DNA of 64,000 nucleotides from Paraphysomonas bandaiensis (Eukaryota > Protista > Chrysophyceae): contig CBFFRP010000374.1 of assembly GCA_965644295.1 (NCBI GenBank), positions 1 to 64,000 on the forward strand, in the 5' to 3' direction. Both the position numbers and the translations under genes were made by a program. This document shows, in pieces, positions 1 through 64,000 of the stretch; the first letter of the stretch is position 1, and each line of letters opens with the position of its first letter. The notes beneath the pieces are model-generated. The model was given only the letters and a program-made list of their open reading frames with translations, was not told the origin of the DNA and made no database searches.

Positions 1-730
1 AACCATCCTATAAAACAACAACAATGACATCACATGAGTCTCTTAGCACTGTATATGCATGTATATCACTGTATATGCATGTATATCACTGTATATGCAT
101 GTATATCACTGTATATGTATGTATATCACTGTATATGCATGTATGTATGATGTATGTATATCACTGTATATGTATATGTATGTATATGGGGGTTACTTAC
201 ATTGTTTCTTATAGTGATATCTGCTCCTTTGCTGATGAGATATTCACATGTATCTCTGTGACCTTCAGAGGCAGCCTTGTGAAGAGCTGTCCAACCAACC
301 TATAAAACAACAATAACATCACATGAGCCCTCTTAGCACTGTATATGTATGTATGTATGTATGTATATCACTGTATATGTATATGTATGTATATGGGGGT
401 TACTTACATTGTTTCTTATAGTGATATCTGCTCCTTTGCTGATGAGATATTCACATGTATCTCTGTGACCATTATAGGCAGCATAGTGAAGAGCTGTAGA
501 ACCATACTATAAAACAACAACAATAACATCACATGAGCCCTCTCAGTACTGTATATGTATGTATATCACTGTATATGTATGTATGTATGTATGTATATCA
601 CTGTATATGCATGTATAGGGGGGTTACTTACATTGTTTCTTATAGTGATATCTGCTCCTTTGCTGATGAGATATTCACATGTATCTCTGTGACCTTCAGA
701 GGCAGCCTTGTGAAGAGCTGTCCAACCAAC
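1..730 (-). CDS. Partial ankyrin-repeat gene, one 33-aa repeat per 99-nt exon (exons 632-730, 408-506, 201-299, and one starting at 7 that runs off the window)
   Basis: The minus strand reads ttttatag|exon|gtaagt. Exons translate VGWTALHKAASEGHRDTCEYLISKGADITIRNN (twice), YGSTALHYAAYNGHRDTCEYLISKGADITIRNN and DG...; all are phase 0-0. The 5' part of the gene was not found. Confidence 0.9.
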
Positions 731-840
731 CTATAAAACAACAATAACATCACATGAGCCCTCTTAGCACTGTATATGTATGTATATCACTGTATATGTA
801 TGTATATCACTGTATATGTATGTATATCACTGTATGTATG
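1..840. repeat. Tandem exon-intron repeat, units about 207-292 bp, length varying through TATG/TATATCACTG microsatellite in the introns
   Basis: The block tataaaacaacaa...cacatgag...ggttacttacattgtttc...gaagagctgt recurs about 3.5 times. Confidence 0.95.
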
Positions 841-1164
841 CGAAGGAGAATACAGCGCAGTAGATAGGAAGTGTTCTTTTCAGTTTAGTACTTGAAGTGA
901 CTGTATAAGATACGCATAGGGTACATAGGAGTGTATGGTGTAATATTATGCAGTGTTTTGTGTACGGCTGTAGACTAGAGGCATAATTTCCTCTTAATGA
1001 TAAGTTCTGTAGTAACTATAAAGAGATCCTTGCTTTGACTACCTGTAGCGTAGACTGTGTAAAAAGGCAACGGGGGTATTCCGTCCGTATACGATTAGCA
1101 ACGTCCGTTAACAACCAGACCGAGTACCGCATACTTTCTCTACGTAAGAGGAAATTAGGAAAAT

Positions 1165-1572
1165 ATGAAGAAAAATGGGACCGAAAAACCCAAGAGGTTT
1201 GCAAGATATCCATCGCAATCAACCAGAGATACATCAGAATCAGTGCCGAAGTTGCGATATGGCGCAAACAGCAACCTGGCGACGTTCAAGCAGAAGATGG
1301 TAGTGGCAGCTATGGAGAAGTACGGAAACCTTGCAAGACTGTTGGAACTCGACGAGTATTATGAGCCTGATCCAATCGAATTGAGTGATTACGATAAAAG
1401 AACAGATCCGCTTGGCATACAGCTCGATCGAATGAAGAATAAGATCAAGACCAGGGATAGGCTGATATCTGAGATGGAAAACAACAGAACGCCATTCTAC
1501 GGATATATGCTCAGACATTTAAGCAACGAGTCTTTGGATGCAATCAAACTGTTAGACGAATACGAGCAAATA
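1165..1572 (+). mobile_element. Truncated gag-like N-terminus of an LTR retrotransposon; 841-1164 may be its LTR/leader
   Basis: The ORF VPKLRYGANSNLATFKQK...MEKYGNLARLLE...YYEP...FYGYMLRHLSNES resembles copia-type gag in protists, recognised by eye. It is cut at about 1572 by the opposite-strand copia fragment. Confidence 0.55.
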
Positions 1573-4500
1573 CGCCTCCCAGCTATTGAATGCCTGAGAT
1601 AAAAAAATTCTTGACAGTAAAATAGACTCATCTCTAAGTCTAAACCTCTGTCTAAAAAACTCAGTACCTACTTGCGCCTTCTTTTATCCCTTGGTCCCTC
1701 ATTAATCACTTCAGTGGAACTCTTAACTTTCTCTCCAAGATTTCTCTTTCTCTGCTCCATATATGATAAACCAACCAATGACTTTGTATAAATATCTGCT
1801 GCTTGTTGCGATGTATGCACATGCACTAACTTAATCGTATTGAACTGATTGGGATCCACGTGCTCTCTCACCATGTGATACTTAATCTCAATGTGCTTCG
1901 ACTTCTTGTGAAACACTGGGTTTTCGGCCAAATCCTGGGCACTCTGACTGTCGATGAAGAATGGTGTGGGTTTGATGAGCCTCAACTTAATCTCACCCGT
2001 CACCCCCCGAACCCATAGCACTTCTTGGAGACCCGAGTAAATACACTGATACTCAGACTGCATGCTTGACGTTGCCACTGTCGTCTGCAGTTTGGACTGC
2101 CAGACTATAGGCCCTCCCGCTGCAAACCCAACGTACCCCGACGTGGACTTCCTGGAGAGCTGATCTCCCGCCCAATCCGCGTCAGTAAACATATGGAAGT
2201 CGAACCGTCTACTCCCATATTGAATCCCTTTGTCAATAGAACCACGAATATATTGCCATACATGTGTTAATAGCTTGCATACTTCAATATTCACCTTATT
2301 ACTGAACCGAGACAGTACTCCCACTGCATAGGCTATATCCGGCCTCGTGTTCATCGATAGATATAGTAATGCACCTATCAGCGGCCGATATGGGAAGTTA
2401 TCTACTATAAGCTGTTCCTCCTCGGTATGCTCATGCCGCGCCCCTTTTGCCACTAAATCCATTGCTTCCGCCGGTAGAGGACTCTTCCGTACCTTTCGCG
2501 GTGACCCAAGATACTTTTCAAACTTTTCTAAGATCTTAGCCGCATATACTGATTGGTCAAGACGAATATACTCTGGCGTTCTTGTGACTCGAACATTCAG
2601 AAAATGTTCCATCTCGCCCATATCCTTCATATCAAACCGGGCACACAGTTGAGCTTTTAATATCCTTCACTATGTTGACATCACGACCTAACACTAGGAT
2701 ATCATCCACATATATCGTTAATAATATCAATTCATCGCCCTTATACTGATAATACAAACACGGGTCTAATACACATGGTTTAAAAATGCATAGATCGTAT
2801 GAATTTATCCAATGTTTTCCACCACGACCGCGGGGAACTCCGAAGCCCGTATAACGACTTCTTCAACTTAAAGCAGTACCCCTCAGGCAGCTGAAAGTCC
2901 GGAGTTGCCTTCATACATACATCCCCCTCTATATCTGCATATAGAAATGCGTTAGACACATCCAGTCGATTGAATTACCATGTTCATCACGAAAGCTATG
3001 GCGATTAACAGTCGCACTGTTACCCCTTTAGCAACGGGTGCGAAATGGTTCGCCCAACCACTCGACTGCTGTCCACAACCGATTGCTACAAGACGAGCCT
3101 TATATCGGCGGACCTCTCCCTCCTTATCGTACTTCTTTCCATAGACGTACTTGGAGTGCAGTGGGACGACTCCGTCCGGTATACGAGTCACCTCCATGGT
3201 GTCTCGCTTCGCCAAACCCTCTCGCTCTACACGGCGAGCTCGTCTCCACTCCCTGTGCTCGGCACTCTCCAAGGACTCACGATGTGTCTGAGGCACTGTC
3301 GACTCTTCCGCTGACATCCACACTGAGTCTGCCTCCCGCAAAAGGTCACTCACATCACTCTCATCACTCAAATGATGGATTTGTCCTAACACCGACACAT
3401 TCGTTACCGTCCTTGGAGTTCTTGCGCGTTTGCCGTGCGGATGATTCTCGGCAGGGTCCCTTCCCCCGAAGGTAATGCTGAGTCAGCCTGGGGCTGCACC
3501 TGCCCACTTTCCGACTGCTGTGGCACCACTCCGCTGATACCGCCGTCACGGTTGTCAGTAACTCTGGCCCTAACCACCCTCTGCGCAAGATCCTCTGTCA
3601 TCTTCTTGATGTCAGCAATATGAATAGGAGTTTTATCCTCCACTTGAACCTGGTTACCAGTAACCAACGACCGGTATCCTACAATAAGTCCCTTCCTTAT
3701 CACCACTCTGTTAGTCTTGTATAGCAGACCACCATCCTCATGGTGCTTTCCGATAAGATACTCAAACTCACCCGGTTGACGAGCCTCGGGATCTATAGCC
3801 ACTTGAGCCTCCTCCAGCTCTCTATAATAATCCTGAGACCTCTCAGGTACCGATTCATCAAATAATACATGTACAGAGTGTACTACGGTGTCCCCCACTA
3901 GCACCTTGTATCCTTTTCGATCAGCTGGATACCCTATGAAATAACCTGTCATTGCTTTTGTCCTCCCAGTCCTTCCTCCTGTCGGCCTTGGGTGTTAGCA
4001 CATATGCTTTGCACCCCCATTTCCGTAGCCACGATAGGCTGGGAACGCTCCCCCCTGGGACACACTCATATGGAGACATCCATCCTTGCCACGTCCGAGT
4101 TGGCATTCGTCGCACAATGTAACATGCAGTTTGATAAGCATCAAACCAGAACGACTTTGGAAGTCCAGATGCCGTCAACATCGTCAGTGTCATCTCCCCA
4201 ATTGTTCGGAATTTCCTCTCAGACACCGCGTTGAGCTCTGGCGTGTCTCGTGTTGTATGTGACACCCGAGTCCCATATCGCTGCAACAGATACTCTCTTA
4301 TCTGCTGACTAATAAGTTCGGATCCTCCATCGGCATGATACTCCACTATACGGTTCCACCCTCGTACTTCACTAAGTGGACCTCGCACAAGTGTCGTAGA
4401 CATTTGAACACCTCCTCTCCGCTTCGAGTCCTCAGTCCATATTCCCATATCATCTTTGTTGCTAAGTCCGTAAATAGGAGCACGTACTTATACCCTTGTC

Positions 4501-4636
4501 TGGATTCACAATTGAGATAGACGGAGATGTCCGCTGTTACTCTTTCCAGGAACCTGACTGCGCTTAGCTCTTCGTTGTCCCGTGATTTGAACGAATGCCT
4601 GGTTATCTTTCGCCTGGCACACCATTTACACAGGGG
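1572..4636 (-). mobile_element. Internal Ty1/copia pol fragment (integrase-RT-RNaseH) with no LTRs and several frameshifts
   Basis: Motifs HADGGSE, ELNAVSER, YKARLVA, IYVDD, TDADWAG and KSKHIEIKYH. Near-identical to 60409-63470. Confidence 0.95.
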
Positions 4637-4922
4637 CTTAAGCTGGAATGTAGGGATGTGAAAGTAGACACTTACAGAACACTGTTGTGAATCCCTACTT
4701 GACATACTGGTGCATTAACTTAATATTGGTGTATTGTACCTATCAGATTTTTTCTGACATGAGTATTATTATCTGCAGGTTTTGATGAATCGAATCCGGA
4801 TCGTGTGACTGGAGCCCTTTATTGATATAGCGCCTTCAAACTATTCCTATACTAAAGACATATAATGCAGCTTCGAGGTAAGATATGAATTAATGCTAAA
4901 ACAAGTTACTACAGTAATTACA
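4635..4922. repeat. About 288-bp direct repeat, copy 1
   Basis: Identical by eye to 12495-12782 (ggcttaagctggaatg...acagtaattaca). Confidence 0.93.
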
Positions 4923-8466: not shown

Positions 8467-10479
8467 TTACACATCGCCAATGGCCTGGAATCCCTCCTCA
8501 ATTTCTCTGCAGAGTGAATCATAGTATGCCTTCAACTCCTCGACAGGTGTCTTGGGGTTCTGAAGAAAAGTGCCAGTCAACATACATCTTTAACAAAGCA
8601 AAATTGCCCTTACCAAGAACTTCGCGTCGATGACCTTCTGCATGACAGCTCCCATGGTGGTCTTAATGTATGCCCAGGTAACCTTCTTCTCCGCAGGACT
8701 CTCAGCAATAGCACGCTGGCAGTTATCGTAGAAAGTAATGATACACTTGAGCATACCAATCTGTACAAACCCAATAAGAACACGACGCCAATATCTTAAT
8801 TCTACGTACCGACTTAGACAACGGGCAAGTGTAGTCGTATTCCGTGAAAGCGTTCTGGTACAGATAATCATCGATGATGATCTCCGCAACGTCCATCACA
8901 ACTTTCTGGTCCTCGGAGAGAGATTCCTTACCGACCAACTGCACGATCTCGGACAAGTTATCCTGTTGAGCGAGAATGTCACGAGCCTTGTTTCGGAGCT
9001 TGGAGTAGCTCTCGTCGTAATTGGTATTGAAGAACGGCTCAAGCACACGCATGTACTTGGTATAAGAGATAAGCCAGTTGACGGAAGGAAAGTGCTTTCT
9101 CTGGGCAAGCTTCTTGTCGAGACCCCAAAAGACCTGTACAATAGAGAGAGTAGCAGCCGTGACGGGATCGGAGAAATCTCCACCAGGAGGAGAGACAGCC
9201 TAAACAGATGTTACATTGACACAACATATGGTATCAATATACAACTCACCCCAACAATAGAAACTGTACCCTCCCTATCGGGGGAACCCAGGCAGCGCAC
9301 ACGACCGGCTCTCTCGTAAAAGGCAGCAAGACGAGCACCGAGGTAGGCAGGGTAACCAGAGTCGGCAGGCATCTCTCCAAGACGACCAGAGATCTCACGA
9401 AGTGCCTCGGCCCAACGAGAGGTAGAGTCAGCCATCATAGATACGTTCATGCCCTGGTCACGGAAGTACTCAGCGAGAGTGATACCAGTGTAAATAGAAG
9501 CCTCACGGGCAGCCACAGGCATGTTAGAGGTATTAGCTACGAGAGTGGTACGCTTCATGATTCCGACCTCCTTTCCATTGAAAGTCATTGTAAGCTCGGG
9601 GAATTCTGCGAGCACCTCAGCCATCTCGTTACCACGCTCACCACAACCAACGTACACAATGGCGTCGGAGTTAGAGTACTTGGATAGTGTTTGAGAGATA
9701 ACAGTCTTTCCGCACCCGAAAGCACCAGGCACAGCACAGGTACCACCCAGCACAGATGGGAAAACGGCATCGATACAACGGAGACCGGTGGTCAATGCAG
9801 CATTACCAGGGAGCTTCTCAACAGTAGGACGAGGACGACGCACAGGCCAGAAGTGTGACAAATTCAAAGTGTGAGTACGGTCGAGAGTCTCGTTGTACAC
9901 CTCCATAACTGGCTCATTGATGTGGAAAAGATCCTTTCCATCGGTTCCACCACCATAGATCTTGACAACTTCTCCATAAACGTGAGGGGGGCACATAATC
10001 TTGTGATCCGAAATGATTTCGTTCTCAAAAACAGATCCGAAAATATCACCACCAGAGATAGGGTCACCCTCTCTGAAGTTACCAGGAGTGAACTGCCACT
10101 GCTTAGAGGTATCAAGAGCGTTAATATCAACACCACGAGGAATGAAACAATCCTGTGATTGTTCAGCAATATCACTCAATGGACGCTGAATACCATCAAA
10201 GATAGTGTCCATAATACCCGGACCAAGCTCAACAGATAGAGGCTGTCTCTTACGGAGCACAGGATCACCAACAGTCAAACCAGATGTATCCTCATACACC
10301 TGAATAGATGCGGTATCACCTTCAAGTTTAATAATCTCTCCTACGAGCTTATGAAAGCCTACACGGACAAGTTCATACATTGCTGCACCAGACATGCCTT
10401 CAGCAATAACGAGTGGACCAGAGACTCTGAAGATGTAACCAAGATCACCTTCCTTTGCTTCATCGAAAATGTTGGCCAT
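8467..10479 (-). CDS. ATP6V1A: V-type H+-ATPase catalytic subunit A (4 exons)
   Basis: Motifs [37 protein letters not shown] and YLYQNAF. Short GT-AG introns; ends QAIGDV*. Confidence 0.97.
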
Positions 10480-12139: not shown

Positions 12140-12215
12140 TCATACATACATACATACATACATACATACATACATACATACATACATACATACTTACATA
12201 CATACATACATACAT
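12140..12215. repeat. (CATA)n microsatellite
   Basis: Read directly from the sequence. Confidence 0.95.
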
Positions 12216-12494: not shown

Positions 12495-12782
12495 GGCTTA
12501 AGCTGGAATGTAGGGATGTGAAAGTAGACACTTACAGAACACTGTTGTGAATCCCTACTTGACATACTGGTGCATTAACTTAATATTGGTGTATTGTACC
12601 TATCAGATTTTTTCTGACATGAGTATTATTATCTGCAGGTTTTGATGAATCGAATCCGGATCGTGTGACTGGAGCCCTTTATTGATATAGCGCCTTCAAA
12701 CTATTCCTATACTAAAGACATATAATGCAGCTTCGAGGTAAGATATGAATTAATGCTAAAACAAGTTACTACAGTAATTACA
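12495..12782. repeat. About 288-bp direct repeat, copy 2, preceded by a GC-rich dyad (ggccctcggcccgaggcgggcc)
   Basis: Identical by eye to 4635-4922. Confidence 0.93.
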
Positions 12783-16061: not shown

Positions 16062-16492
16062 ATGTATGTCTGTATGTCTGTATGTGTATGTATGTATGTA
16101 TGTATGTATGTATGTATGTATGTATGTATGTATGTATGTATGTATGTATGTATGTATGTATGTATGTATGTATGTATGTATGTATGTATGTATGTATGTA
16201 TGTATGTATGTATGTATGTATGTATGTATGTATGTATGTATGTATGTATGTATGTATGTATGTATGTATGTATGTATGTATGTATGTATGTATGTATGTA
16301 TGTATGTATGTATGTATGTATGTATGTATGTATGTATGTATGTATGTATGTATGTATGTATGTATGTATGTATGTATGTATGTATGTCTGTATGTATGTA
16401 TGTATGTATGTATGTATGTATGTATGTATGTATGTATGTATGTATGTATGTATGTATGTATGTATGTATGTATGTATGTATGTATGTATGTA
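16062..16492. repeat. (TATG)n microsatellite, about 430 bp
   Basis: Read directly from the sequence. Confidence 0.98.
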
Positions 16493-25773: not shown

Positions 25774-26153
25774 TGTCATATATTATTATATCTAAAATAT
25801 CTGTATCACTCTACCAGTTTCCTCATAGATATTTCTTGAAATAGTTTCTACATCTAGAAATAAAATATAGAAACTTCACACTGTCCTACATATCTACTTA
25901 TACCGCCATAATACTGTACGGGTTACCATTCACGTCCGTATGTACGGATAGTCCCGGCACATTCCAACCCTCTATCTGGCCTTAATACTCATATCTTCTA
26001 ACCTTATCATAACCATATTCTACATCTTATCTCATGCTACTACCTACACTACTTTATCCTTATTCTTATACCATAATAGCCTCATAATCCACCACTTCCA
26101 TTACACCCCAATTTGCTACATATCATTTGATGACACACTTCCCCTATCTTTCT
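25774..26153 (-). mobile_element. Putative 3' LTR (25774-26135, 362 bp) preceded by a polypurine tract
   Basis: The minus strand reads AGAAAGATAGGGGAAGTG then TGTCAT...ATGACA (TG..CA ends with a 6-bp inverted terminal repeat). No partner LTR is in the window. Confidence 0.55.
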
Positions 26154-28255
26154 GACTGGGCTGCGCTATTAGATGCTTCTCGTTCTCGCTCCTCTTCTCT
26201 CAAGAAATCCTGTATCCCTTCAATCCATTCATCAAAGGCTCCACCCCTCATCATCCTATTCTCTGGGTTTGCTCCATGTTTTAGGAGGACGTAAGCAGTA
26301 ATTGGGTCATGATTTTCGTGAGCTATTTCAAGTGGAGTTGAACCAAAACCACGATGACTTCTGGCTTCCGGATCTGCTCCTGCGTGTAATAGAAACGCTA
26401 CAACATCAGCATGTCCACATTCAGCAGCCATGTAAAGGGCGGTATGACCGAACGCATTTTCAGACTCTAAGTCTACTCCCTCTCTCACTATCAGGAACTT
26501 TATCATATCTAGATCTCCAATGACAGCAGCGGAGTGAAACGGGGCGTTGCCACAATTATTTTGAGCTTCCGTCCATCCTTCTTGTTTTGGGAGCAACATG
26601 ACAATATTTAGATTTCCAAACTCTGTAGCCAAGGAGCAAGGGGTCTTGCCGAGATCATTTTTAACCTCCGAGTTTGCTCCATGCTTTAGCAGTAACTTTG
26701 CCGTCTCATAGAGTCCAATAAGAGCAGCGAGGTGGAGGGGTGTGTTGCCGAACTCATCTGTAACGTTTGGGCTTGCCCCTCTTTCTAGTAAAATTTTTGC
26801 AGTACTGAGGCATTCATATTCGCCAAGCCAATGAAGAGCGGTCCTGCCAGAATGACATCTGGCTTCCGGGTCTGCTCCTGCCCTTATCAGCAACTCTGCA
26901 ATATCAGGATCTCTATGATGAAGGACAGCTAGATGAAGTGGGGTATGGCCATTGCACTCTCTAGTATCCAGATCGGCTCCCTTATCTAGCAAAAGCTCTA
27001 AAACATCAGGGCTTCCACGCATAGCGGCGATGTGAAGGAGAGTCTCTGCGAAGTCATTCCTATGAGTGAGAAGCCCTACATTTATGTTTTCTGGTGTCAG
27101 TAGTGACTTGAGGGTTAATAAAAAGTTTTCTTCTCCAGCACATGCTTCTGCCATCTTTCTTACTGTATTTTCTGAGAGCATAGGTGCAATAAGGCTCATC
27201 ACCTCATCAGTATAGGGTAGTGTAGAAAATTTTCCACCTTCACTCTCGAGCCCAGCGCAAAGAAGCTCTTTGGTTTCATCATCTAAAATCACATAGTTAA
27301 CCCGCGGATTCTTATTTTGGAGCTCTATTGCAAGCTCTTTACCGCGTGCTAATAAAGTCTCTGTAAGAGTTTTAAGTTCTGGACACTTCTCTTCCCAGCT
27401 AGGAATAAGCTGAAGACTTCCCTTGATGGCCTTGGCGTAATAAGACTCTAAAACAGTCAAAGGAAAGGTTTGGTCAAAATCAGGTCCTCCTGTGATTGAC
27501 AACAAGGTCAAAAGATGCTCAGTGGTAAAGTCACTAAGTTCCTTCATACGCTCAACAGTGGCACTAGGGTCTTGCTCTATGGAACCCAAAGGCTCTAAGC
27601 AGTAAAAATCTCTTGGCTCAAAGCTGAAAAGCTTCCGATGTTCGTTGAAGAACGCATAGCAGTGCTCATTATGTTCTTCCTGGGGGAGCTCTTGCTCATG
27701 ATACAGCTCAAGATGTGCGTTAAACTCTGCCTGCAGTTGCCCATCAAGATACTTTCCTGACAACTCGGTCTCCCCTTCAGTGATAGGAGTATATTCTTCT
27801 TTAAGCAACACAGAACCATCTTCTCTTTGTAGGAGGTAAGGATGCAAGACGCTTGGGATATCTTGAAGGGTAGATGTTTGTTGTTGATTGACTAGCACCG
27901 CTGTATCATATTCCTGCTTAATGTCTTGAATTCTCTTCTGTATGTAAGATTGTTTGGCTTCTTTCAGCAAGAGTTGGTCTGCTGATAGCACAGAGACCGT
28001 TCTACTCTCAGTGTTAGCAGCATATCCTCCAGTCTTTGCCTGGAAGTAGAGAGCGATAAGGAGCGGAGATGGAGTGGGAGCTTCTTCGCTTGTATTCACA
28101 AAGGATTCGATACTAATCTTGGTATATTCTTTCACCAGATCAGAAGTTCCTGTTGGAGTTTCTGTAGGAGTTCCTGTTGGAGTTTCTTGCTGTAAGTCTA
28201 CAAACTTCATCATCATGTCAAGTTTTGACAAGATCCGCTCGTCGTATTGAGGCAC
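26144..28255 (-). CDS. Intronless protein with an unknown helical N-terminal region and 8 C-terminal ankyrin repeats (first ATG at 28216)
   Basis: Repeated GxTPLHLA...LLxxGAD motifs in an uninterrupted ORF of about 700 aa. Confidence 0.88.
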   Translation of the reverse strand: MPQYDERILSKLDMMMKFVDLQQETPTGTPTETPTGTSDLVKEYTKISIESFVNTSEEAPTPSPLLIALYFQAKTGGYAANTESRTVSVLSADQLLLKEAKQSYIQKRIQDIKQEYDTAVLVNQQQTSTLQDIPSVLHPYLLQREDGSVLLKEEYTPITEGETELSGKYLDGQLQAEFNAHLELYHEQELPQEEHNEHCYAFFNEHRKLFSFEPRDFYCLEPLGSIEQDPSATVERMKELSDFTTEHLLTLLSITGGPDFDQTFPLTVLESYYAKAIKGSLQLIPSWEEKCPELKTLTETLLARGKELAIELQNKNPRVNYVILDDETKELLCAGLESEGGKFSTLPYTDEVMSLIAPMLSENTVRKMAEACAGEENFLLTLKSLLTPENINVGLLTHRNDFAETLLHIAAMRGSPDVLELLLDKGADLDTRECNGHTPLHLAVLHHRDPDIAELLIRAGADPEARCHSGRTALHWLGEYECLSTAKILLERGASPNVTDEFGNTPLHLAALIGLYETAKLLLKHGANSEVKNDLGKTPCSLATEFGNLNIVMLLPKQEGWTEAQNNCGNAPFHSAAVIGDLDMIKFLIVREGVDLESENAFGHTALYMAAECGHADVVAFLLHAGADPEARSHRGFGSTPLEIAHENHDPITAYVLLKHGANPENRMMRGGAFDEWIEGIQDFLREEEREREASNSAAQSER

Positions 28256-40888: not shown

Positions 40889-40988
40889 AGCAAATATATA
40901 GGAATTGTATAAAGCAGGTTTAAGTAATCAATGCGAGAAACATGGACCATATATGCTATCCGTAGTGTACACGCTATACAATGGTACG

Positions 40989-41148
40989 TACATACATACA
41001 TACATACATACATACATACATACATACATACATACATACATACATACATACATACATACATACATACATACATACATACATACATACATACATACATACA
41101 TACATACATACATACATACATACATACATACATACATACATACATACA
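40989..41148. repeat. (CATA)n microsatellite between the divergent RRP4 and EPC-like genes
   Basis: Read directly from the sequence. Confidence 0.97.
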
Positions 41149-41625
41149 TCATATAATACGTATGTATATAGAGTAGTAGCAGAGTACGAAGTCCGGAAGT
41201 GTGGATGAAGTCTTTTGCACGTGTGGTACACTGCTGTACCATAATACCGTATATCCATATCTGTATACGGTACATACATACACATATACTCTGCTGAGCT
41301 CTGTACGTATATATGTATATATATATGGTTTCATATAGAATTCCATTAAAGGCTTCTCTTATCCACATATCTCTACTTATACACATCACATCCATCACCA
41401 GTGCCAACCTCCATGAAGAACATCTCATACATCCCATAGCCAATCAATCAAACGGGCTGTATATAGTAATATTATTATAATTAAGCTGCAAACACTGCAG
41501 TGATCGTGCTGTATATGTGAGATGGTCCATTCACACTCTCATCAGGTAGAAACACTCTATTCCTCTCATTCTATGCATTAAATATATGATATAATCAGAC
41601 TAGAGATATACCTGTAGCCGGTAAC

Positions 41626-46286: not shown

Positions 46287-49025
<2,739 letters not shown>

Positions 49026-55776: not shown

Positions 55777-58700
55777 ATGGAGGGTAATACACTTGACCCT
55801 GTATTGGATATGAGTGACTCATGTGTCTCAGCATCTCACAGTCCACACAACATGTGTTTTAAAGTCAAATGGAGTCTGTCTCACTCCCATCAAGATCTCA
55901 TCACTACATACGATAAGATCTCTATACACCCCCCTACTACCACACCTTCCTCTTCATTAATATATCAATATAATCGTCAGAATTTATTAAACGATAGCTG
56001 TATAATTACATATGACTCTCTGTGTGATATAGAGATGGGTGTCGCCTACACGGTATGTTATACATCTGCCCCGAGTGGTCATATATTAGCACAAGCTACT
56101 GTAACTACCATATCATATGAACAAGAAATACAGAATCTTCCAGGAAGATTACAAGTAGAATATGATTCCAAAGACAATCATGTATTGATATATTTCGACT
56201 TGTCTGCTGTTCCAAATTTTTCACCGAGTTCGTCAGACTCTTTACACATATGTCGAGAGAAAGATAGCTCCTTCCATTTTCAGGCTCGTATATCTGCGAC
56301 GGGTGAAGTTAAAGGTAAAACTTATTTTCATGTTAATACTGAACTTAAAAATGGCGTAAACTACAATGTCCGATATTTATTCGATGATAATAATATAGTC
56401 GGAGTTAGTAACGTTTTCCAGTGTTCTGGATTATTTTGCCACTCGAGCTGTGAGGAGTGTATATTAACAGCAAATTTCGATCCTGAAACTTGTTCAGTGG
56501 ATGCTACTTGGGAGTTCCCGCAGCCTACTTCTATAACTGTTTCGAACACACAGTTTTTATATTTATATAGGACAGAGGAGACCAGTGTGGATGTTGATTT
56601 GCAGCAATATCACTATATATCTATCCAGACATCTGGTAAATATAAAGGAAGCGTACGAATAGCAGTTCAAGGTGCAGTAAGTAATAATGAAACTTATACG
56701 CTGCGATATGTCGACACCACCTCGTGGACGAGCTATGGATCAGTGACTTTTACTGCACGGGATGTATCAACAAGTCATAGCGACGTGAGCCAGCTTTCGG
56801 CGGCCATGGTGTATAATTCAGGAGCATTCATGAGATATATGACACAGGAAGCCGAAGAGATTAATGATGCACCATACAACCCTATTTTGAGTGTTGATGT
56901 TGACAAAGACTACTCTGTGGCGCAGTTTTTGGAGGAATACCATGCAGCATCTCTCCCAAATTCATCTGAGAAGTTCACTGAAGGTTTTGCACCTCTCTCT
57001 GCAGAAGACCTTCAACAATCACTCTACATTCATCTAGACAAATCCCCTGGTGTAATATACGCAGGTGCGGGTTGCTCCATGGATGCACCGTCGTGTTCGC
57101 CGTCTTGGTGGAGGTTAATGGCAGAGCTTGTGCGAGCAGTGTTCAGTACTGCCCCTGAAGAACACCGCCCTCGTCAATATACGGAGAGTGATGTTTCACG
57201 TCAACCCGAAGAAATTATGGAGTCATTTTATTATATACTCGGAGAGAAGCTACTGACATTGTTTCGAGCTCTGGAATATGGTCGTCCGAATGCCAATCAC
57301 GTTGCGATGGCCAAACTTGCTAAAGCAGGAAAAATTAAGGCTATCTTTACAACAAACTTTGATTTATTCATTGAGCGTGCTTTGAAAGAAGAAAGTGTTG
57401 ACTTTAAAGCTGTAGTCACCAATGAGGAATTTGAAGAGTATCTATATATGTTAAAATCTGGCACAGCTCCAGTGGCAGTGCTGAAAATACACGGCACAGT
57501 GGACAGACCGGAAACTATCGTGGCTGTGGCAAGCCACTATAAAATGGACAAAGGATTTTCCGGTACGAAAGCCGAAGTTTTACTAGATCTGGTTCAACAG
57601 TTTCCAGTATTGTTTATCGGATATTCGGGGTGGGATTTTGTACATAAAAACTACCAAGACTTTTGGTCCCGTGTGCAGACCAACGGCTGTAGAGGTCTCT
57701 TTTGGCTGAAGTTGTTGGGGTTTTCTGGGGGGCCTGATTTAGGTAGGGTTGTAGGGCGCCATGTGGGCACTAAACTTCATATTGGAGCTGGTCGGTTACC
57801 TGATTTTTATAAGGATATCTTGAATCGGTATGTGGAGGATACGGAGAGCTGTTTCCTGGGAAAGGCAGCCCGGGTAGATGCCACTCTAGAGTTAAATACA
57901 GTGAATGCATTACGGTTTGAATTTATGCTCCAGTGGGTGCAAAATATTCATCCCACCACGTTATTATCCTTGGTTATGATTGAAGGACATCGACTTAATG
58001 AGATCATGCAGAAATCTGCGGAGAGATTAAAGCGACATGCTGGAAGTCAAGAGGTAGCGGAAAGCACATCAGACATGATGGCGGTCTACATGCAGTTAGC
58101 ACTGGATCTTCAAAGTGGTATAATTACTGAAGAAGAATACAACGACCGCGTCAACGTTCAAACAATGAAAACAACTTTTCAGTATGTTGCACTAGATAAA
58201 GAGAAAAAGGAGCAAGTAATGCTCCTCTGTAGTCGAGCTTGTCGTTCTCACTCGTTACTGAAAGACAACTCTACCAACCAAAGTATGCTTGGGTCATTAA
58301 TAATGTCAATATCTCATTCTCTACCCGAGACTGCTAGCCCTCAGGAGTACATTGATACAGCACTGCGATTTCTACAGAAAGTTGAGCGATACAAATCAAG
58401 TCCAGCAGCCAGAGACAAGATCGTAGCGGATACACTCTTGTACTGCTCCTCTATGCTGGCGGGATCAGTGGACAATCAACAAAACGTAGATTCATGGATC
58501 ATTCAGTTGGCTGACAAAGCTATATTAGAAGAGTGGACTGACGATAAATTATCGACGGAGCGCGCAAATTTATGTAGCCGAATAACCCAGTTGACCTCAG
58601 GTACTCTGGATATAGAAGGAATTTTAGATACACAAATGCAGCTCTCGCTTAAAATCCCGGAATCGGAATTGAATATACTGTTAGAAAGCTGCACGGCGAT

Positions 58701-59604
58701 AGCACTGGGGTTAATTAGTCAGTCAGAGCAACGTGGTTTGGGATTTATGAGTCAAACTGGGTTTCAACAGAAAGTGATAGTGCCTCTGTCCATGGACTCT
58801 GACGCCACAATACCAGAATTTGTGTTCAAAGAATACGAAGACAACTACAACCAGACGCTGTCTGGTGTTTTAAATAGGTTGACACTCCTTCGTGACCAAG
58901 GGGCAATATCATCGACGGAGGGTGTTTTATCTCCTGCCGAGTTGTTGGCAGCTTTTGATATTTCAACGTTGCTGCTTTGGTATCCTGCTTGCAAGTATGT
59001 CACTGGGTATATAAACTCTCAAAATAAAGCTTTTAAAGGATTTTATCCCAAAGAAGCTCTGCCTAAATCCGTGTGCAATTACTTGCTTCCTCGTGCTTTG
59101 GCCGCGAAGTCCGTTGTCACAGATATTCGACTTGCGCAACCTCTTTTGTCCTTACTGAATGTGATTGGGGAATCACTTTCGAACATCGACCTAATTTACG
59201 ATGCTTCTGAGTCATCTCTTTTATTAACTCAAGGGAAGGTGACTGAGACAACACCACCACCGATTCCGGAGGCACTTGCGAATGCCTATCTGGAGCAAGG
59301 GGATTATGAAATGGCCTTCACATGGTACGAGAAGGCACTCGATGCTATTCGTACCTGTGTCCGTCGGGAGAAGGTGGATGCTATTGTGTTAAACGCATGT
59401 CTTGTGGCTGCTAAATATGGAAAAGTAGATACCGCCCTACGTTGGGCTTTTACAACAAGTCCGCTATTTGTTAACATACCCTCAGGATTGGGTATAGCGG
59501 GACCTGGTCGCTCTATACTACTTCAACAGATGAATGCGTGGATTACGGAGCTTGGGTTTGCCTCTATTAAAGAGGCGGAGGCTCATTTAATGTACGCCAA
59601 TTAA
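55777..59604 (+). CDS. SIR2-like (SIR2_2, bacterial-type) domain protein with N-terminal beta-sandwich repeats and a C-terminal TPR; intronless, 1275 aa
   Basis: Motifs YAGAGCS..PSW, PNANH, IFTTNFD, LKIHG and LFIGYSGWD, plus TPR-like EALANAYLEQGDYEMAFTWYEKALD. Confidence 0.88.
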   Translation: MEGNTLDPVLDMSDSCVSASHSPHNMCFKVKWSLSHSHQDLITTYDKISIHPPTTTPSSSLIYQYNRQNLLNDSCIITYDSLCDIEMGVAYTVCYTSAPSGHILAQATVTTISYEQEIQNLPGRLQVEYDSKDNHVLIYFDLSAVPNFSPSSSDSLHICREKDSSFHFQARISATGEVKGKTYFHVNTELKNGVNYNVRYLFDDNNIVGVSNVFQCSGLFCHSSCEECILTANFDPETCSVDATWEFPQPTSITVSNTQFLYLYRTEETSVDVDLQQYHYISIQTSGKYKGSVRIAVQGAVSNNETYTLRYVDTTSWTSYGSVTFTARDVSTSHSDVSQLSAAMVYNSGAFMRYMTQEAEEINDAPYNPILSVDVDKDYSVAQFLEEYHAASLPNSSEKFTEGFAPLSAEDLQQSLYIHLDKSPGVIYAGAGCSMDAPSCSPSWWRLMAELVRAVFSTAPEEHRPRQYTESDVSRQPEEIMESFYYILGEKLLTLFRALEYGRPNANHVAMAKLAKAGKIKAIFTTNFDLFIERALKEESVDFKAVVTNEEFEEYLYMLKSGTAPVAVLKIHGTVDRPETIVAVASHYKMDKGFSGTKAEVLLDLVQQFPVLFIGYSGWDFVHKNYQDFWSRVQTNGCRGLFWLKLLGFSGGPDLGRVVGRHVGTKLHIGAGRLPDFYKDILNRYVEDTESCFLGKAARVDATLELNTVNALRFEFMLQWVQNIHPTTLLSLVMIEGHRLNEIMQKSAERLKRHAGSQEVAESTSDMMAVYMQLALDLQSGIITEEEYNDRVNVQTMKTTFQYVALDKEKKEQVMLLCSRACRSHSLLKDNSTNQSMLGSLIMSISHSLPETASPQEYIDTALRFLQKVERYKSSPAARDKIVADTLLYCSSMLAGSVDNQQNVDSWIIQLADKAILEEWTDDKLSTERANLCSRITQLTSGTLDIEGILDTQMQLSLKIPESELNILLESCTAIALGLISQSEQRGLGFMSQTGFQQKVIVPLSMDSDATIPEFVFKEYEDNYNQTLSGVLNRLTLLRDQGAISSTEGVLSPAELLAAFDISTLLLWYPACKYVTGYINSQNKAFKGFYPKEALPKSVCNYLLPRALAAKSVVTDIRLAQPLLSLLNVIGESLSNIDLIYDASESSLLLTQGKVTETTPPPIPEALANAYLEQGDYEMAFTWYEKALDAIRTCVRREKVDAIVLNACLVAAKYGKVDTALRWAFTTSPLFVNIPSGLGIAGPGRSILLQQMNAWITELGFASIKEAEAHLMYAN

Positions 59605-60379: not shown

Positions 60380-63300
60380 CTCCCCCTCAATTGAGTGTTG
60401 TACTTATGACGCCTCCCAGCTATTGAATGCCTGAGATAAAAAAATTCTTGACAGTAAAATAGACTCATCTCTAAGTCTAAACCTCTGTCTAAAAAACTCA
60501 GTACCTACTTGCGCCTTCTTTTATCCCTTGGTCCCTCATTGATCACTTCAGTGGAACTCTTAACTTTCTCTCCAAGATTTCTCTTTCTCTGCTCCATATA
60601 TGATAAACCAACCAATGACTTTGTATAAATATCTGCTGCTTGTTGCGATGTATGCACATGCACTAACTTAATCGTATTGAACTGATTGGGATCCACGTGC
60701 TCTCTCACCATGTGATACTTAATCTCAATGTGCTTCGACTTCTTGTGAAACACTGGGTTTTCGGCCAAATCCTGGGCACTCTGACTGTCGATGAAGAATG
60801 GTGTGGGTTTGATGAGCCTCAACTTAATCTCACCCGTCACCCCCCGAACCCATAGCACTTCTTGGAGACCCGAGTAAATACACTGATACTCAGACTGCAT
60901 GCTTGACGTTGCCACTGTCGTCTGCAGTTTGGACTGCCAGACTATAGGCCCTCCCGCTGCAAACCCAACGTACCCCGACGTGGACTTCCTGGAGAGCTGA
61001 TCTCCCGCCCAATCCGCGTCAGTAAACATATGGAAGTCGAACCGTCTACTCCCATATTGAATCCCTTTGTCAATAGAACCACGAATATATTGCCATACAT
61101 GTGTTAATAGCTTGCATACTTCAATATTCACCTTATTACTGAACCGAGACAGTACTCCCACTGCATAGGCTATATCCGGCCTCGTGTTCATCGATAGATA
61201 TAGTAATGCACCTATCAGCGGCCGATATGGGAAGTTATCTACTATAAGCTGTTCCTCCTCGGTATGCTCATGCCGCGCCCCTTTTGCCACTAGATCCATT
61301 GCTTCCGCCGGTAGAGGACTCTTCCGTACCTTTCGCGGTGACCCAAGATACTTTTCAAACTTTTCTAAGATCTTAGCCGCATATACTGATTGGTCAAGAC
61401 GAATATACTCTGGCGTTCTTGTGACTCGAACATTCAGAAAATGTTCCATCTCGCCCATATCCTTCATATCAAACCGGGCACACAGTTGAGCTTTAATATC
61501 CTTCACTATGTTGACATCACGACCTAACACTAGGATATCATCCACATATATCGTTAATAATATCAATTCATCGCCCTTATACTGATAATACAAACACGGG
61601 TCTAATACACATGGTTTAAAATGCATAGATCGTATGAATTTATCCAATGTTTTCCACCACGACCGCGGGGAACTCCGAAGCCCGTATAACGACTTCTTCA
61701 ACTTAAAGCAGTACCCCTCAGGCAGCTGAAAGTCCGGAGTTGCCTTCATATATACATCCCCCTCTATATCTGCATATAGAAATGCGTTAGACACATCCAG
61801 TTGATGAATTACCATGTTCATCACGAAAGCTATGGCGATTAACAGTCGCACTGTTACCCCCTTAACAACGGGTGCGAAATGGTTCGCCCAACCACTCGAC
61901 TGCTGTCCACAACCGATTGCTACAAGACGAGCCTTATATCGGCGGACCTCTCCCTCCTTATCGTACTTCTTTCCATAGACGTACTTGGAGTGCAGTGGGA
62001 CGACTCCGTCCGGTATACGAGTCACCTCCATGGTATCTCGCTTCGCCAAACCCTCTCGCTCTACACGGCGAGCTCGTCTCCACTCCCTGTGCTCGGCACT
62101 CTCCAAGGACTCACGATGTGTCTGAGGCACTGTCGACTCTTCCGCTGACATCCACACTGAGTCTGCCTCCTGTAAAAGGTCACTCACATCACTCTCATCA
62201 CTCAAATGATGGATTTGTCCTAACACCGACACATTCGTTACCGTCCTTGGAGTTCTTGCGCGTTTGCCGTGCGGATGATTCTCGGCAGGGGTCCCTTCCC
62301 CCGAAGGTAATGCTGAGTCAGCCTGGGGCTGCACCTGCCCACTTTCCGACTGCTGTGGCACCACTCCGCTGATACCGCCGTCACGGTTGTCAGTAACTCT
62401 GGCCCTAACCACCCTCTGCGCAAGATCCTCTGTCATCTTCTTGATGTCAGCAATATGAATAGGAGTTTTATCCTCCACTTGAACCTGGTTACCAGTAACC
62501 AACGACCGGTATCCCACAATAAGTCCCTTCCTTATCACCACTCTGTTAGTCTTGTATAGCAGACCACCATCCTCATGGTGCTTTCCGATAAGATACTCAA
62601 ACTCACCCGGTTGACGAGCCTCGGGATCTATAGCCACTTGAGCCTCCTCCAGCTCTCTATAATAATCCTGAGACCTCTCAGGTACCGATTCATCAAATAA
62701 TACATGTACAGAGTGTACTACGGTGTCCCCCACTAGCACCTTGTATCCTTTTCGATCAGCTGGATACCCTATGAAATAACCTGTCATTGCTTTGTCCTCC
62801 CAGTCCTTCCTCCTGTCGGCCTTGGGTGTTAGCACATATGCTTTGCACCCCCATTTCCGTAGCCACGATAGGCTGGGAACGCTCCCCCTGGGACACACTC
62901 ATATGGAGACATCCATCCTTGCCACGTCCGAGTTGGCATTCGTCGCACAATGTAACATGCAGTTTGATAAGCATCAAACCAGAACGACTTTGGAAGTCCA
63001 GATGCCGTCAACATCGTCAGTGTCATCTCCCCAATTGTTCGGAATTTCCTCTCAGACACCGCGTTGAGCTCTGGCGTGTCTCGTGTTGTATGTGACACCC
63101 GAGTCCCATATCGCTGCAACAGATACTCTCTTATCTGCTGACTAATAAGTTCGGATCCTCCATCGGCATGATACTCCACTATACGGTTCCACCCCTCGTA
63201 CTTCACTAAGTGGACCTCGCACAAGTGTCGTAGACATTTGAACACCTCCTCTCCGCTTCGAGTCCTCAATCCATATTCCCATATCATCTTTGTTGCTAAG

Positions 63301-64000
63301 TCCGTAAATAGGAGCACGTACTTATACCCTTGTCTGGATTCACAATTGAGATAGACGGAGATGTCCGCTGTTACTCTTTCCAGGAACCTGACTGCGCTTA
63401 GCTCTTCGTTGTCCCGTGATTTGAACGAATGCCTGGTTATCTTCGCCTTGGCACACCATTTACACAGGGGTTTCTTGCAACTCTTCTCCTTTGCCTTCGA
63501 AAGGTGATGTCGTTGTAGTCCTGATCCTCTGAATAACATGTGTCGGTGAGCTTCTATTAACTTCGATTTCGAGACATGTCCAGTACGCTCATGTAAGCGA
63601 TCCAACGCATCTTGTCCTGTATTATCCGACAAATTTACCTCCTCTATCTGATTGCACATAGACACATTTGGCAGATTTAACACCTCCATCAAGTCCACAT
63701 ACGGCATCCCTCCATGCTCATCGTACTCTCCAGTCAACACCTCGTTTCCAGAGTCCAATTCCACGATTTTAGGCTTTCGAAGCAGTTGTAATCCGTATCC
63801 CATTGATCTCAGCATCCCTCCTGACACAATGTTCTTCACCGCTTCTTCACTAACTCTGATGTCTCTCCATTCCCCGAATGTACCAGTTCCCTGTGTCTCC
63901 AATTGAGAACCCTTTCTAGTTAGTTGGATTGCCCCAAACTCAGGAGTAAATGACTCCAGTGCAATTTTATCCTTTACTATAAACAGTCTTTTACTTGCAC
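59979..64000 (-). mobile_element. Ty1/copia LTR retrotransposon continuing beyond the window; pol from 60505 to past 64000 (protease end, GAG-pre-integrase, IN, RT, RNaseH) with one frameshift at about 62885
   Basis: LHERTGH...CKWC, integrase core, QLDVSNAFL, SLYGL, YVDD and RNaseH occur in copia order, followed by a PPT and LTR. Confidence 0.97.

What the first reader, a model, noticed from the sequence alone, without database searches (positions are those of the whole stretch)
1..840. Hypervariable one-exon-per-repeat ankyrin array, like a natural DARPin cassette library
Seen: what looks like satellite DNA is an array of 99-nt exons with canonical ag/gtaagt sites, all phase 0-0, separated by nearly identical introns. 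The two complete exon types differ only at repeat positions 1 (V/Y, and D in the partial exon), 3 (W/S), 8 (K/Y) and 11-12 (SE/YN); all framework codons are identical. Known: these positions lie on the beta-turn/helix-1 binding face, mostly the sites randomised in designed ankyrin proteins. A similar exon-per-repeat shuffling architecture is described for Ectocarpus LRR-ROCO and NB-ARC-TPR candidate immune genes. Inference: a receptor that diversifies its binding surface by exon recombination or skipping. Only three full exons, of two types, are visible.
Basis: partly seen in the sequence, partly recalled or inferred. Interest (0 to 1): 0.85.

Follow-up and report, generated by a model that had tools for sequence, protein, structure and literature searches.

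The report
One-exon-per-repeat ankyrin array, variable binding face
The left edge of the window holds the start of a tandem array in which each 99-base exon encodes exactly one ankyrin repeat, and the repeats differ only at residues of the binding surface. It belongs to a large, transcribed and spliced family in a marine stramenopile, but this copy is cut off upstream and may be a dead fragment.

Summary
On the minus strand, three complete 99-nt phase-0 exons (730-632, 506-408, 299-201) and the start of a fourth (7-1) each encode one full Pfam ankyrin repeat, with ..tatag| acceptors and |gtaagt donors. The two exon types differ by 9 bases. All 9 are non-synonymous and fall in codons 1, 3, 8, 11 and 12. 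The other 84 exon bases are identical.

Contigs of two DNA runs show that the unit is highly repeated in the genome, and the differences between copies pile up in the same codons. Contigs from two marine metatranscriptomes cover the exons, skip the introns, and join exon to exon exactly at the predicted sites. These RNA contigs come from paralogues, not demonstrably from this copy.

The locus is incomplete. The intron upstream of the first exon breaks off at 840 against a dispersed repeat, the array does not resume anywhere in 63 kb, and its 3' part runs off the window.

The receptor, exon-skipping and recombination readings remain untested. The closest known systems are the Ectocarpus LRR/TPR exon arrays and the fungal NLR ankyrin repeats. 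First readers of this scan noted similar arrays on other pieces of the same genome; those notes are unchecked.

The parts
1..7 (-). First 7 bases of a fourth ankyrin exon (GATGGTT, giving D G ..). This is a third exon type at position 1. The array runs off the window here.
8..200 (-). Intron 3, 193 nt: gtaagtaaccccc, then about 7 copies of the 20-nt minisatellite, then a conserved 3' end ..ttttatag.
   Evidence: no RNA contig depth in these bins
201..299 (-). Exon 3, type A, 99 nt, one ankyrin repeat. Identical to exon 1.
300..407 (-). Intron 2, 108 nt.
   Evidence: RNA depth 0 at 301-400
408..506 (-). Exon 2, type B (Y1 S3 Y8 Y11 N12), 99 nt, one ankyrin repeat.
   Evidence: (Ank E 1.2e-11)
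507..631 (-). Intron 1, 125 nt. It carries type-B-specific variants upstream of exon 2 (two SNPs and a TTG insertion).
632..730 (-). Exon 1, type A (V1 W3 K8 S11 E12), 99 nt, one ankyrin repeat.
   Evidence: Ank E 9.6e-11
731..840 (-). The 3' 110 nt of an upstream intron (minisatellite plus conserved acceptor region). It has no 5' splice site and no upstream exon. In other genomic copies the same sequence continues to gtaagtaaccccc.
   Evidence: DNA loose ends at 826 and 786; no resumption anywhere in the window
841..1100 (.). Dispersed high-copy repeat abutting the broken intron. It marks the upstream breakpoint of the array and is not part of the gene.
   Evidence: Very high summed contig depth, with differing left flanks in other copies (tables 2 and 7)
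1572..4636 (-). Ty1/copia retrotransposon fragment with broken ORFs (context only). It is 99.3% identical to a second copy at 60409-63470, which scores RVT_2.

Best explanation
Positions 1-840 are the upstream-most visible part of a tandem array of ankyrin-repeat exons. The array belongs to a large, expressed gene family of a marine ochrophyte stramenopile (by V-ATPase A, chrysophyte/synurophyte-like).

Shown here:
- Each 99-nt exon encodes one complete repeat and both boundaries are phase 0, so any number or order of units stays in frame.
- The framework codons and the intron ends are kept nearly identical between units. Five codons on the beta-turn/inner-helix face (1, 3, 8, 11, 12) are heavily substituted. 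Across the wider family the differences fall mostly in the same codons, and codon 32 also varies (N or D).
- Family members are transcribed and spliced at exactly these sites.

Inferred:
- Units are gained, lost and exchanged by unequal crossing-over and gene conversion between the near-identical, minisatellite-rich introns (concerted evolution).
- Selection keeps or favours differences at the binding residues. The product would then be an ankyrin solenoid whose binding groove is assembled from interchangeable cassettes.

This particular copy is truncated upstream at 840 by a repeat insertion or rearrangement and runs off the window downstream. It is either a piece of a longer gene with a disrupted 5' part or a dead array fragment. 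What the family binds, and which domain it is attached to, is not visible here.
For: - Exon anatomy and splice sites.
- One exon equals one Pfam Ank repeat.
- Nine of 9 differences between types are non-synonymous and confined to 15 of 99 bases (p = 3e-9), while the introns differ at only a few sites.
- The variable positions coincide with DARPin variable positions.
- Family size: 3298 (X1) and 772 (X6) DNA contig pieces lay on the 1.5-kb stretch, and single alternative letters at codons 1, 8, 11, 12 and 32 are carried by about 20-60 different contigs per run.
- Of the exon rows listed, 18 of 27 lie in codons 1, 3, 8, 11 and 12. Most of the rest are synonymous third positions (codons 4, 10, 22) or N32D. 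No indel is listed inside any exon.
- RNA: the polyA and cDNA metatranscriptome contigs X15 and X17 have depth over the three exons and none in the pure intron bins. Seven loose ends read straight from the end of one exon into the start of the next (for example ..GADINIRDN|GGR....RTN|DGL....RDK|LGW..), whereas DNA contigs continue into gtaagtaaccccc at the corresponding place.
- Truncation.
Against: - Only three full exons of two types are visible at this locus, so the locus-level statistics rest on one A/B comparison.
- The family-level profile comes from short de Bruijn contigs filtered at 85% or more likeness. Only the best-supported 40 of 72 rows were printed, so copies with a divergent framework are under-sampled.
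- The RNA contigs differ from this locus by 3-15 bases. They are paralogues or close strains, and expression of this copy is not shown.
- No upstream exon, start codon or attached domain was found in 63 kb.
- Recombination, selection and binding are inferred, not measured.
- Assembly correctness across the repeat could not be checked, because no raw or long reads were available.
Confidence: 0.62

Rival explanations
1. This locus is a non-functional relic. It would be a fragment of an ankyrin-exon array severed from its promoter and 5' exons by a repeat or retrotransposon insertion or a rearrangement, too recent to have decayed. The family is real, but this copy does nothing.
For: - The upstream intron lacks its 5' half and abuts a dispersed repeat at 840, followed by a gag-like ORF and a broken copia.
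- No further ankyrin exon, donor motif or minisatellite of this kind occurs anywhere else in the window.
- No RNA contig matches this copy exactly.
Against: - All three exons are intact with perfect splice sites, and two are identical, so the copy is at least very young.
- The bulk of the array lies beyond the window and is unseen.
- A long repeat-filled intron or an alternative promoter cannot be excluded.
Confidence: 0.35
2. The pattern is neutral. An old two-repeat unit (A-B) was recently duplicated in tandem, and gene conversion has homogenised everything except a short stretch by chance. There would be no selection on binding residues.
For: - The A-B-A order and the identical A units with identical upstream intron ends show very recent block duplication or conversion.
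- The locus offers only one independent A/B comparison.
Against: - The 9 differences are all non-synonymous and sit in 5 codons that coincide with the known ankyrin binding face (P = 0.0017).
- The same codons vary across dozens of other genomic copies, while the framework shows mainly synonymous changes and no indels.
Confidence: 0.07
3. It is an assembly artefact. The array in the window would be a collapsed or chimeric join of reads from many family members, so the order A-B-A and the junction at 840 would not exist in any one chromosome.
For: - The unit is highly repeated.
- Short-read contigs break inside it, and no listed contig spans the stretch.
- The junction at 840 joins two repeated sequences.
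Against: - The three units have different intron lengths and type-specific intron variants in a consistent arrangement, which a collapse would blur.
- Two independent DNA data sets under different organism labels hold most of the 10-kb stretch's words (share 0.89 and 0.72).
- The exon structure and the variation pattern do not depend on the exact order of units.
Confidence: 0.1
4. It is a programmed diversification system. The cassettes would be combined differently in different cells or transcripts, by regulated exon skipping or somatic recombination, to generate a repertoire from one locus. The models would be DSCAM or lamprey VLR.
For: - Phase-0 symmetric exons of equal length make every combination in-frame.
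- Alternative splicing of equivalent LRR exons is reported in brown algae (PMC11378527).
Against: - Nothing here shows alternative exon use.
- Contigs cannot show isoform diversity, and the joints listed are ambiguous because all exons look alike.
Confidence: 0.05

Closest known systems
[quoted passage not shown] 2012, PMC3341825; Teng et al. 2024, PMC11378527)
   Same: - The organism is a stramenopile.
- Each repeat is encoded by one exon of fixed length, with frame-preserving boundaries.
- The family is large.
- Variation sits on the ligand-binding face.
- The arrays are transcribed and spliced.
   Different: - The repeat type is ankyrin (99 nt), not LRR (72 nt) or TPR. In the Ectocarpus genome-wide screen almost no non-LRR, non-TPR loci showed this architecture.
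- No inactivated or reverse-strand exons lie in the introns here.
- No ROC-COR or NB-ARC domain is visible.
- The introns here are minisatellite-rich.
Fungal NLR ankyrin, TPR and WD repeats with high internal conservation (Dyrka et al. 2014, PMC4986451)
   Same: Near-identical ankyrin repeats whose few polymorphic positions map to the inner helix and beta-hairpin of the concave face. These are interpreted as concerted evolution plus diversifying selection, with repeat-number polymorphism.
   Different: - The fungal repeats lie in one continuous coding sequence, not one per exon.
- They are attached to NACHT or NB-ARC domains, which could not be examined here.
- The lineage is different.
Designed ankyrin repeat proteins (DARPins)
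   Same: A fixed 33-residue framework with a handful of variable surface positions. Exon positions 1, 3, 11 and 12 correspond to DARPin randomised positions 3, 5, 13 and 14, and DARPin chains are the best PDB sequence matches.
   Different: - DARPins are man-made.
- DARPin positions 33 and 2 (exon positions 31 and 33) are constant in this array, although they vary among family transcripts.
- Exon position 8 (DARPin L10) varies here but is fixed in DARPins.
Lamprey VLR and arthropod DSCAM cassette systems
   Same: Many similar cassettes that encode parts of one binding surface.
   Different: Those systems assemble or choose cassettes somatically or by mutually exclusive splicing. Nothing of the sort is shown here.

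Membership tests
Ankyrin repeat (Pfam PF00023, clan Ank) | A 33-residue helix-turn-helix-hairpin motif scoring above the Pfam gathering threshold | tested here: met
   41.8 and 44.6 bits against a cut-off of 21.1, covering profile positions 1/2-33 of 33; best PDB matches are designed and natural ankyrin proteins.
Ectocarpus-type exon-per-repeat candidate receptors | Each repeat is encoded by a single exon of constant length | tested here: met
   Three exons of 99 nt, each one full repeat.
Ectocarpus-type exon-per-repeat candidate receptors | Successive exons have the same phase, so shuffling keeps the frame | tested here: met
   All boundaries are phase 0. RNA junctions fall at these exact sites.
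Ectocarpus-type exon-per-repeat candidate receptors | Inactivated or reverse-strand repeat exons inside the introns, as footprints of shuffling | tested here: not met
   The introns contain only minisatellite and conserved ends. There is no plus-strand copy of the exon core and no ANK-motif hit in the introns.
Ectocarpus-type exon-per-repeat candidate receptors | Repeat array attached to a signalling domain (ROC-COR or NB-ARC) | not testable with these tools
   The array runs off the window and is broken upstream. The contig could not be extended.
Ectocarpus-type exon-per-repeat candidate receptors | Excess non-synonymous change at residues of the binding face | tested here: met
   Nine non-synonymous and 0 synonymous differences between types, confined to 5 binding-face codons. 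The same codons vary across family contigs. No formal codon-model test was possible.
Fungal-NLR-type highly internally conserved repeats | Repeats at least 85% identical over at least 100 residues | tested here: inconclusive
   A and A are 100% identical. A and B are 28 of 33 residues (84.8%) and 90.9% at the DNA level. Only 99 residues are visible.
Fungal-NLR-type highly internally conserved repeats | Central NACHT or NB-ARC NOD domain | not testable with these tools
   No part of the gene outside the repeats is in the window.
Fungal-NLR-type highly internally conserved repeats | Repeat-number polymorphism between isolates | not tested
   Only short contigs were available, and none spans the array.

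The most novel reading that the evidence does not exclude
A unicellular marine stramenopile keeps a genome-wide library of interchangeable ankyrin cassettes, one exon each. It uses them, through rapid germline exon shuffling and possibly alternative exon use, as a diversifying recognition system for prey, pathogens or symbionts. This would be an ankyrin-based counterpart of the brown-algal LRR/TPR system and of fungal NLR repeats.
Probability: 0.15. Interest if true: 0.85.

Novelty: new variant of a known kind. Interest (0 to 1): 0.55.

Why it matters
Exon-per-repeat arrays with hypervariable binding faces are known for LRR and TPR repeats in brown algae. Near-identical ankyrin repeats with hypervariable faces are known in fungal NLRs, but without introns. 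I found no paper describing the ankyrin version with one exon per repeat, and this locus belongs to a large, expressed family of that kind in a marine protist.

If the family proves to be a recognition system, it would show that repeat-cassette diversification arose independently with a third solenoid type. It would also give a natural analogue of DARPin libraries, with a ready-made catalogue of tolerated surface residues. The locus itself adds only three exons and is probably incomplete, so the value lies in the family.

Tried and rejected
- Extending the contig leftwards: five exact-product look-ups for ORFs near the window start found nothing on record. The only 100% V-ATPase A match is a 2-kb metatranscriptome contig.
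- Collecting more family members by protein search:
  - phmmer with the 33-aa exon against 1.84 billion representatives returned only long generic ankyrin proteins, at most 19 of 28 framework identities.
  - The word-index search refuses queries shorter than 40 aa.
  - A 54-aa sense read-through and a 67-aa antisense ORF found no candidates.
  - A multi-repeat query would have had to be typed, so it was left out.
- DNA pattern scans: metagenome contigs twice, genome contigs once and viral contigs once all gave 0 hits.
- Looking for the rest of the array or upstream exons in the window: none found.
- Taxonomy through the ESM Atlas was uninformative.
- Literature: seven searches found no description of one-exon-per-repeat ankyrin arrays.
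- The joints (for example 473 to 680 and 503 to 208) were considered as evidence of exon skipping or reordering. They were rejected as uninterpretable, because all exons share the same framework and the mapping is arbitrary.
- The first sequencing-run request failed because the machine was busy. The repeat worked.

Full report
WHAT IS THERE

Read on the minus strand, positions 1-840 contain three complete exons at 730-632, 506-408 and 299-201, and the first 7 bases of a fourth at 7-1. Each complete exon is 99 nt. Each is preceded by ..ttgttttatag and followed by gtaagtaaccccc, so all boundaries are phase 0.

Each exon translates to a 33-residue peptide that matches Pfam Ank (PF00023) over profile positions 1/2-33 of 33, at 41.8 and 44.6 bits against a cut-off of 21.1. 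One exon is therefore exactly one ankyrin repeat in the standard register. The 48-nt framework occurs three times, against none in 100 shuffles.

Exons 1 and 3 are identical (type A). Exon 2 (type B) differs from them at 9 bases, and the partial fourth exon starts with D, a third state at position 1.

The introns are 125, 108 and 193 nt long. They share the first 13-20 nt and the last 45 nt or so, and differ in the copy number of a 20-nt minisatellite. They also carry a few SNPs and a TTG indel that go with the exon type downstream. "Nearly identical introns" is therefore only partly right.

THE VARIATION PATTERN

All 9 A/B differences are non-synonymous and lie in codons 1, 3, 8, 11 and 12: V/Y, W/S, K/Y, S/Y and E/N. 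The other 84 exon bases are identical (Fisher p = 3e-9). The conserved intron ends differ at a few sites, so the framework is at least as conserved as the flanking intron, while the five codons are far more diverged.

The HMMER alignment of the exon to DARPin chains fixes the register. Exon positions 3, 11 and 12 align with positions that differ between the internal repeats of one DARPin. By the published DARPin design (my knowledge: randomised positions 2, 3, 5, 13, 14, 33), exon positions 1, 3, 11 and 12 are four of the six randomised sites. The chance that at least 4 of 5 variable positions fall among 6 of 33 is 0.0017.

Position 8 lies on the inner helix. Together with the beta-hairpin, that is where the hypervariable sites of fungal NLR ankyrin repeats map (PMC4986451).

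THE WIDER FAMILY, FROM PUBLIC READS

Twenty runs hold the first 10 kb of the window or part of it, among them DNA-type runs under four coded organism labels, a seawater metagenome and marine metatranscriptomes. I laid contigs of two DNA runs (X1, X6) and two RNA runs (X15 polyA, X17 cDNA) on positions 1-1500 at 85% or more likeness.

DNA runs:
- X1 placed 3298 contig pieces on the stretch and X6 placed 772, so the unit (and the adjoining repeat) is highly repeated.
- Single alternative letters are carried by roughly 20-60 different contigs per run.
- Mapped to codons, 18 of the 27 listed exon rows fall in codons 1, 3, 8, 11 and 12.
- Most of the rest are synonymous third positions (codons 4, 10, 22) or N32D, where D is the majority state. 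Changes in codons 22-24 come from one to three low-depth contigs.
- No insertion or deletion is listed inside any exon, whereas several are listed in introns.

Caveats: these are short de Bruijn contigs, the 85% filter under-samples copies with a different framework, and only the 40 best-supported of 72 rows were printed.

TRANSCRIPTION AND SPLICING

In both RNA runs, contig depth lies over the three exons and is zero in the pure intron bins (1-200, 301-400, 551-600), while the DNA runs cover the introns (table 2).

Seven RNA loose ends, translated in frame, run from the start of an exon directly into the end of a preceding exon. Examples are ..GADINIRDN|GGR....DYNLRTN|DGL....INIQNK|DGW....GADIHVRDK|LGW.. 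and ..GADIHIRAA|DGW... DNA contigs at corresponding places continue into gtaagtaaccccc.

The family is therefore transcribed and spliced at exactly the predicted sites. Positions 31-33, which belong to the same beta-turn, also vary among members.

The RNA contigs differ from this locus by 3-15 bases (table 8), so they are paralogues or other strains. Expression of this copy is not shown, and contigs cannot show exon skipping.

THE LOCUS IS INCOMPLETE

Upstream of exon 1 there are 110 nt of typical intron 3' sequence (731-840), but no donor site and no exon. At 841 a dispersed high-copy repeat begins. It is followed by a gag-like ORF and a broken Ty1/copia element at 1572-4636, which is 99.3% identical to a second copy at 60409-63470.

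Neither the exon core, the ankyrin motif of this family, the donor motif nor the minisatellite occurs again in the remaining 63 kb. In other genomic copies the same intron sequence continues to the donor (loose ends at 826 and 786).

The array has therefore been severed upstream by an insertion, a rearrangement or possibly an assembly join, and downstream it leaves the window. I could not extend the contig.

WHICH ORGANISM

The V-ATPase A exon at 9211-10479 is 100% identical to a JGI metatranscriptome protein. Its identity to named relatives is:
- 89% to Mallomonas annulata and 87% to Dinobryon divergens
- 82-83% to a raphidophyte and a brown alga
- 78-80% to diatoms

Closely related proteins (92-98%) are filed under Symbiodinium, Ectocarpus and Mesodinium records, which looks like a common co-cultured organism (inference).

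The genome is thus a marine ochrophyte closest to chrysophytes and synurophytes. This does not fit the word "diatom" in an earlier follow-up note (s1-436739).

HOW IT MOST LIKELY WORKS

Shown: one repeat per phase-0 exon, a near-invariant framework and intron ends, substitutions concentrated on the binding face both within the array and across many copies, and spliced transcripts of the family.

Inferred: near-identical, minisatellite-rich introns favour unequal crossing-over and gene conversion. These add, delete, move and homogenise units, while selection preserves or drives differences at the binding residues. The encoded solenoid would present a binding groove built from interchangeable cassettes.

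What it binds, and whether the family acts in recognition of prey, pathogens or partners, is speculation. First-reader notes on other pieces of the genome mention arrays attached to a kinase or F-box, or framed by cap exons. Those notes are unchecked, and I could not read the sequences.

COMPARISON WITH KNOWN SYSTEMS

The closest architecture is the Ectocarpus LRR-ROCO and NB-ARC-TPR system: one repeat per exon, frame-preserving boundaries, positive selection on the concave face and alternative splicing (PMC3341825 and PMC11378527). It differs in repeat type, and its genome-wide screen found almost no non-LRR, non-TPR loci with this design. Its hallmark of inactivated or inverted exons inside introns is absent here.

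The closest evolutionary behaviour is that of the fungal NLR ankyrin repeats with high internal conservation (PMC4986451), which have no intron per repeat.

Seven literature searches found no report of an exon-per-repeat ankyrin family. That library does not cover most subscription journals.

VERDICT

The binding-face reading is supported, and the family is large and expressed. The receptor and exon-shuffling mechanism is plausible but untested.

This particular locus is a truncated edge fragment with three exons of two types. I rate it a new variant of a known kind, of moderate interest, with most of the interest belonging to the family rather than to this copy.

Noticed in passing
window 4635-4922 and 12495-12782: Two 288-nt direct repeats, 100% identical and 7.9 kb apart, bracket the V-ATPase A gene region. 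The left copy adjoins the end of the copia fragment. They could be LTRs of different elements or a segmental or assembly feature.
   Followed up: no
window 1572-4636 and 60409-63470: Two Ty1/copia copies are 99.3% identical. The right one has long ORFs (797 aa with RVT_2). The left one is split into several ORFs, so it carries frameshifts or stops despite its youth.
   Followed up: partly
window 55777-59604 (+): An intron-free 1275-aa ORF has a SIR2_2 domain (E 3.5e-15) and C-terminal TPR hits. This architecture is reminiscent of SIR2-containing STAND or defence proteins.
   Followed up: no
window 47418-49025 (-): A 535-aa ORF combines a cyclic-nucleotide-binding domain with a protein kinase domain (PKG- or PKA-like fusion). 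The kinase match is cut at the ORF end.
   Followed up: no
window 26144-28255 (-): An intron-free 703-aa ORF contains many ordinary, non-identical ankyrin repeats (Ank_2 E 1e-54).
   Followed up: partly
window 16062-16492, 40985-41153, 12141-12215: There are long (ATGT)n/(TACA)n microsatellites, up to 108 copies. The same tetranucleotide theme makes up the intron minisatellite of the ankyrin array, so this genome is rich in such repeats.
   Followed up: no
window 9211-10479 (-): V-ATPase A places the genome nearest to chrysophytes and synurophytes (87-89% identity) rather than diatoms (78-80%). Proteins 92-98% identical are filed under Symbiodinium, Ectocarpus and Mesodinium records, which suggests the organism or close relatives are frequent culture companions.
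   Followed up: partly
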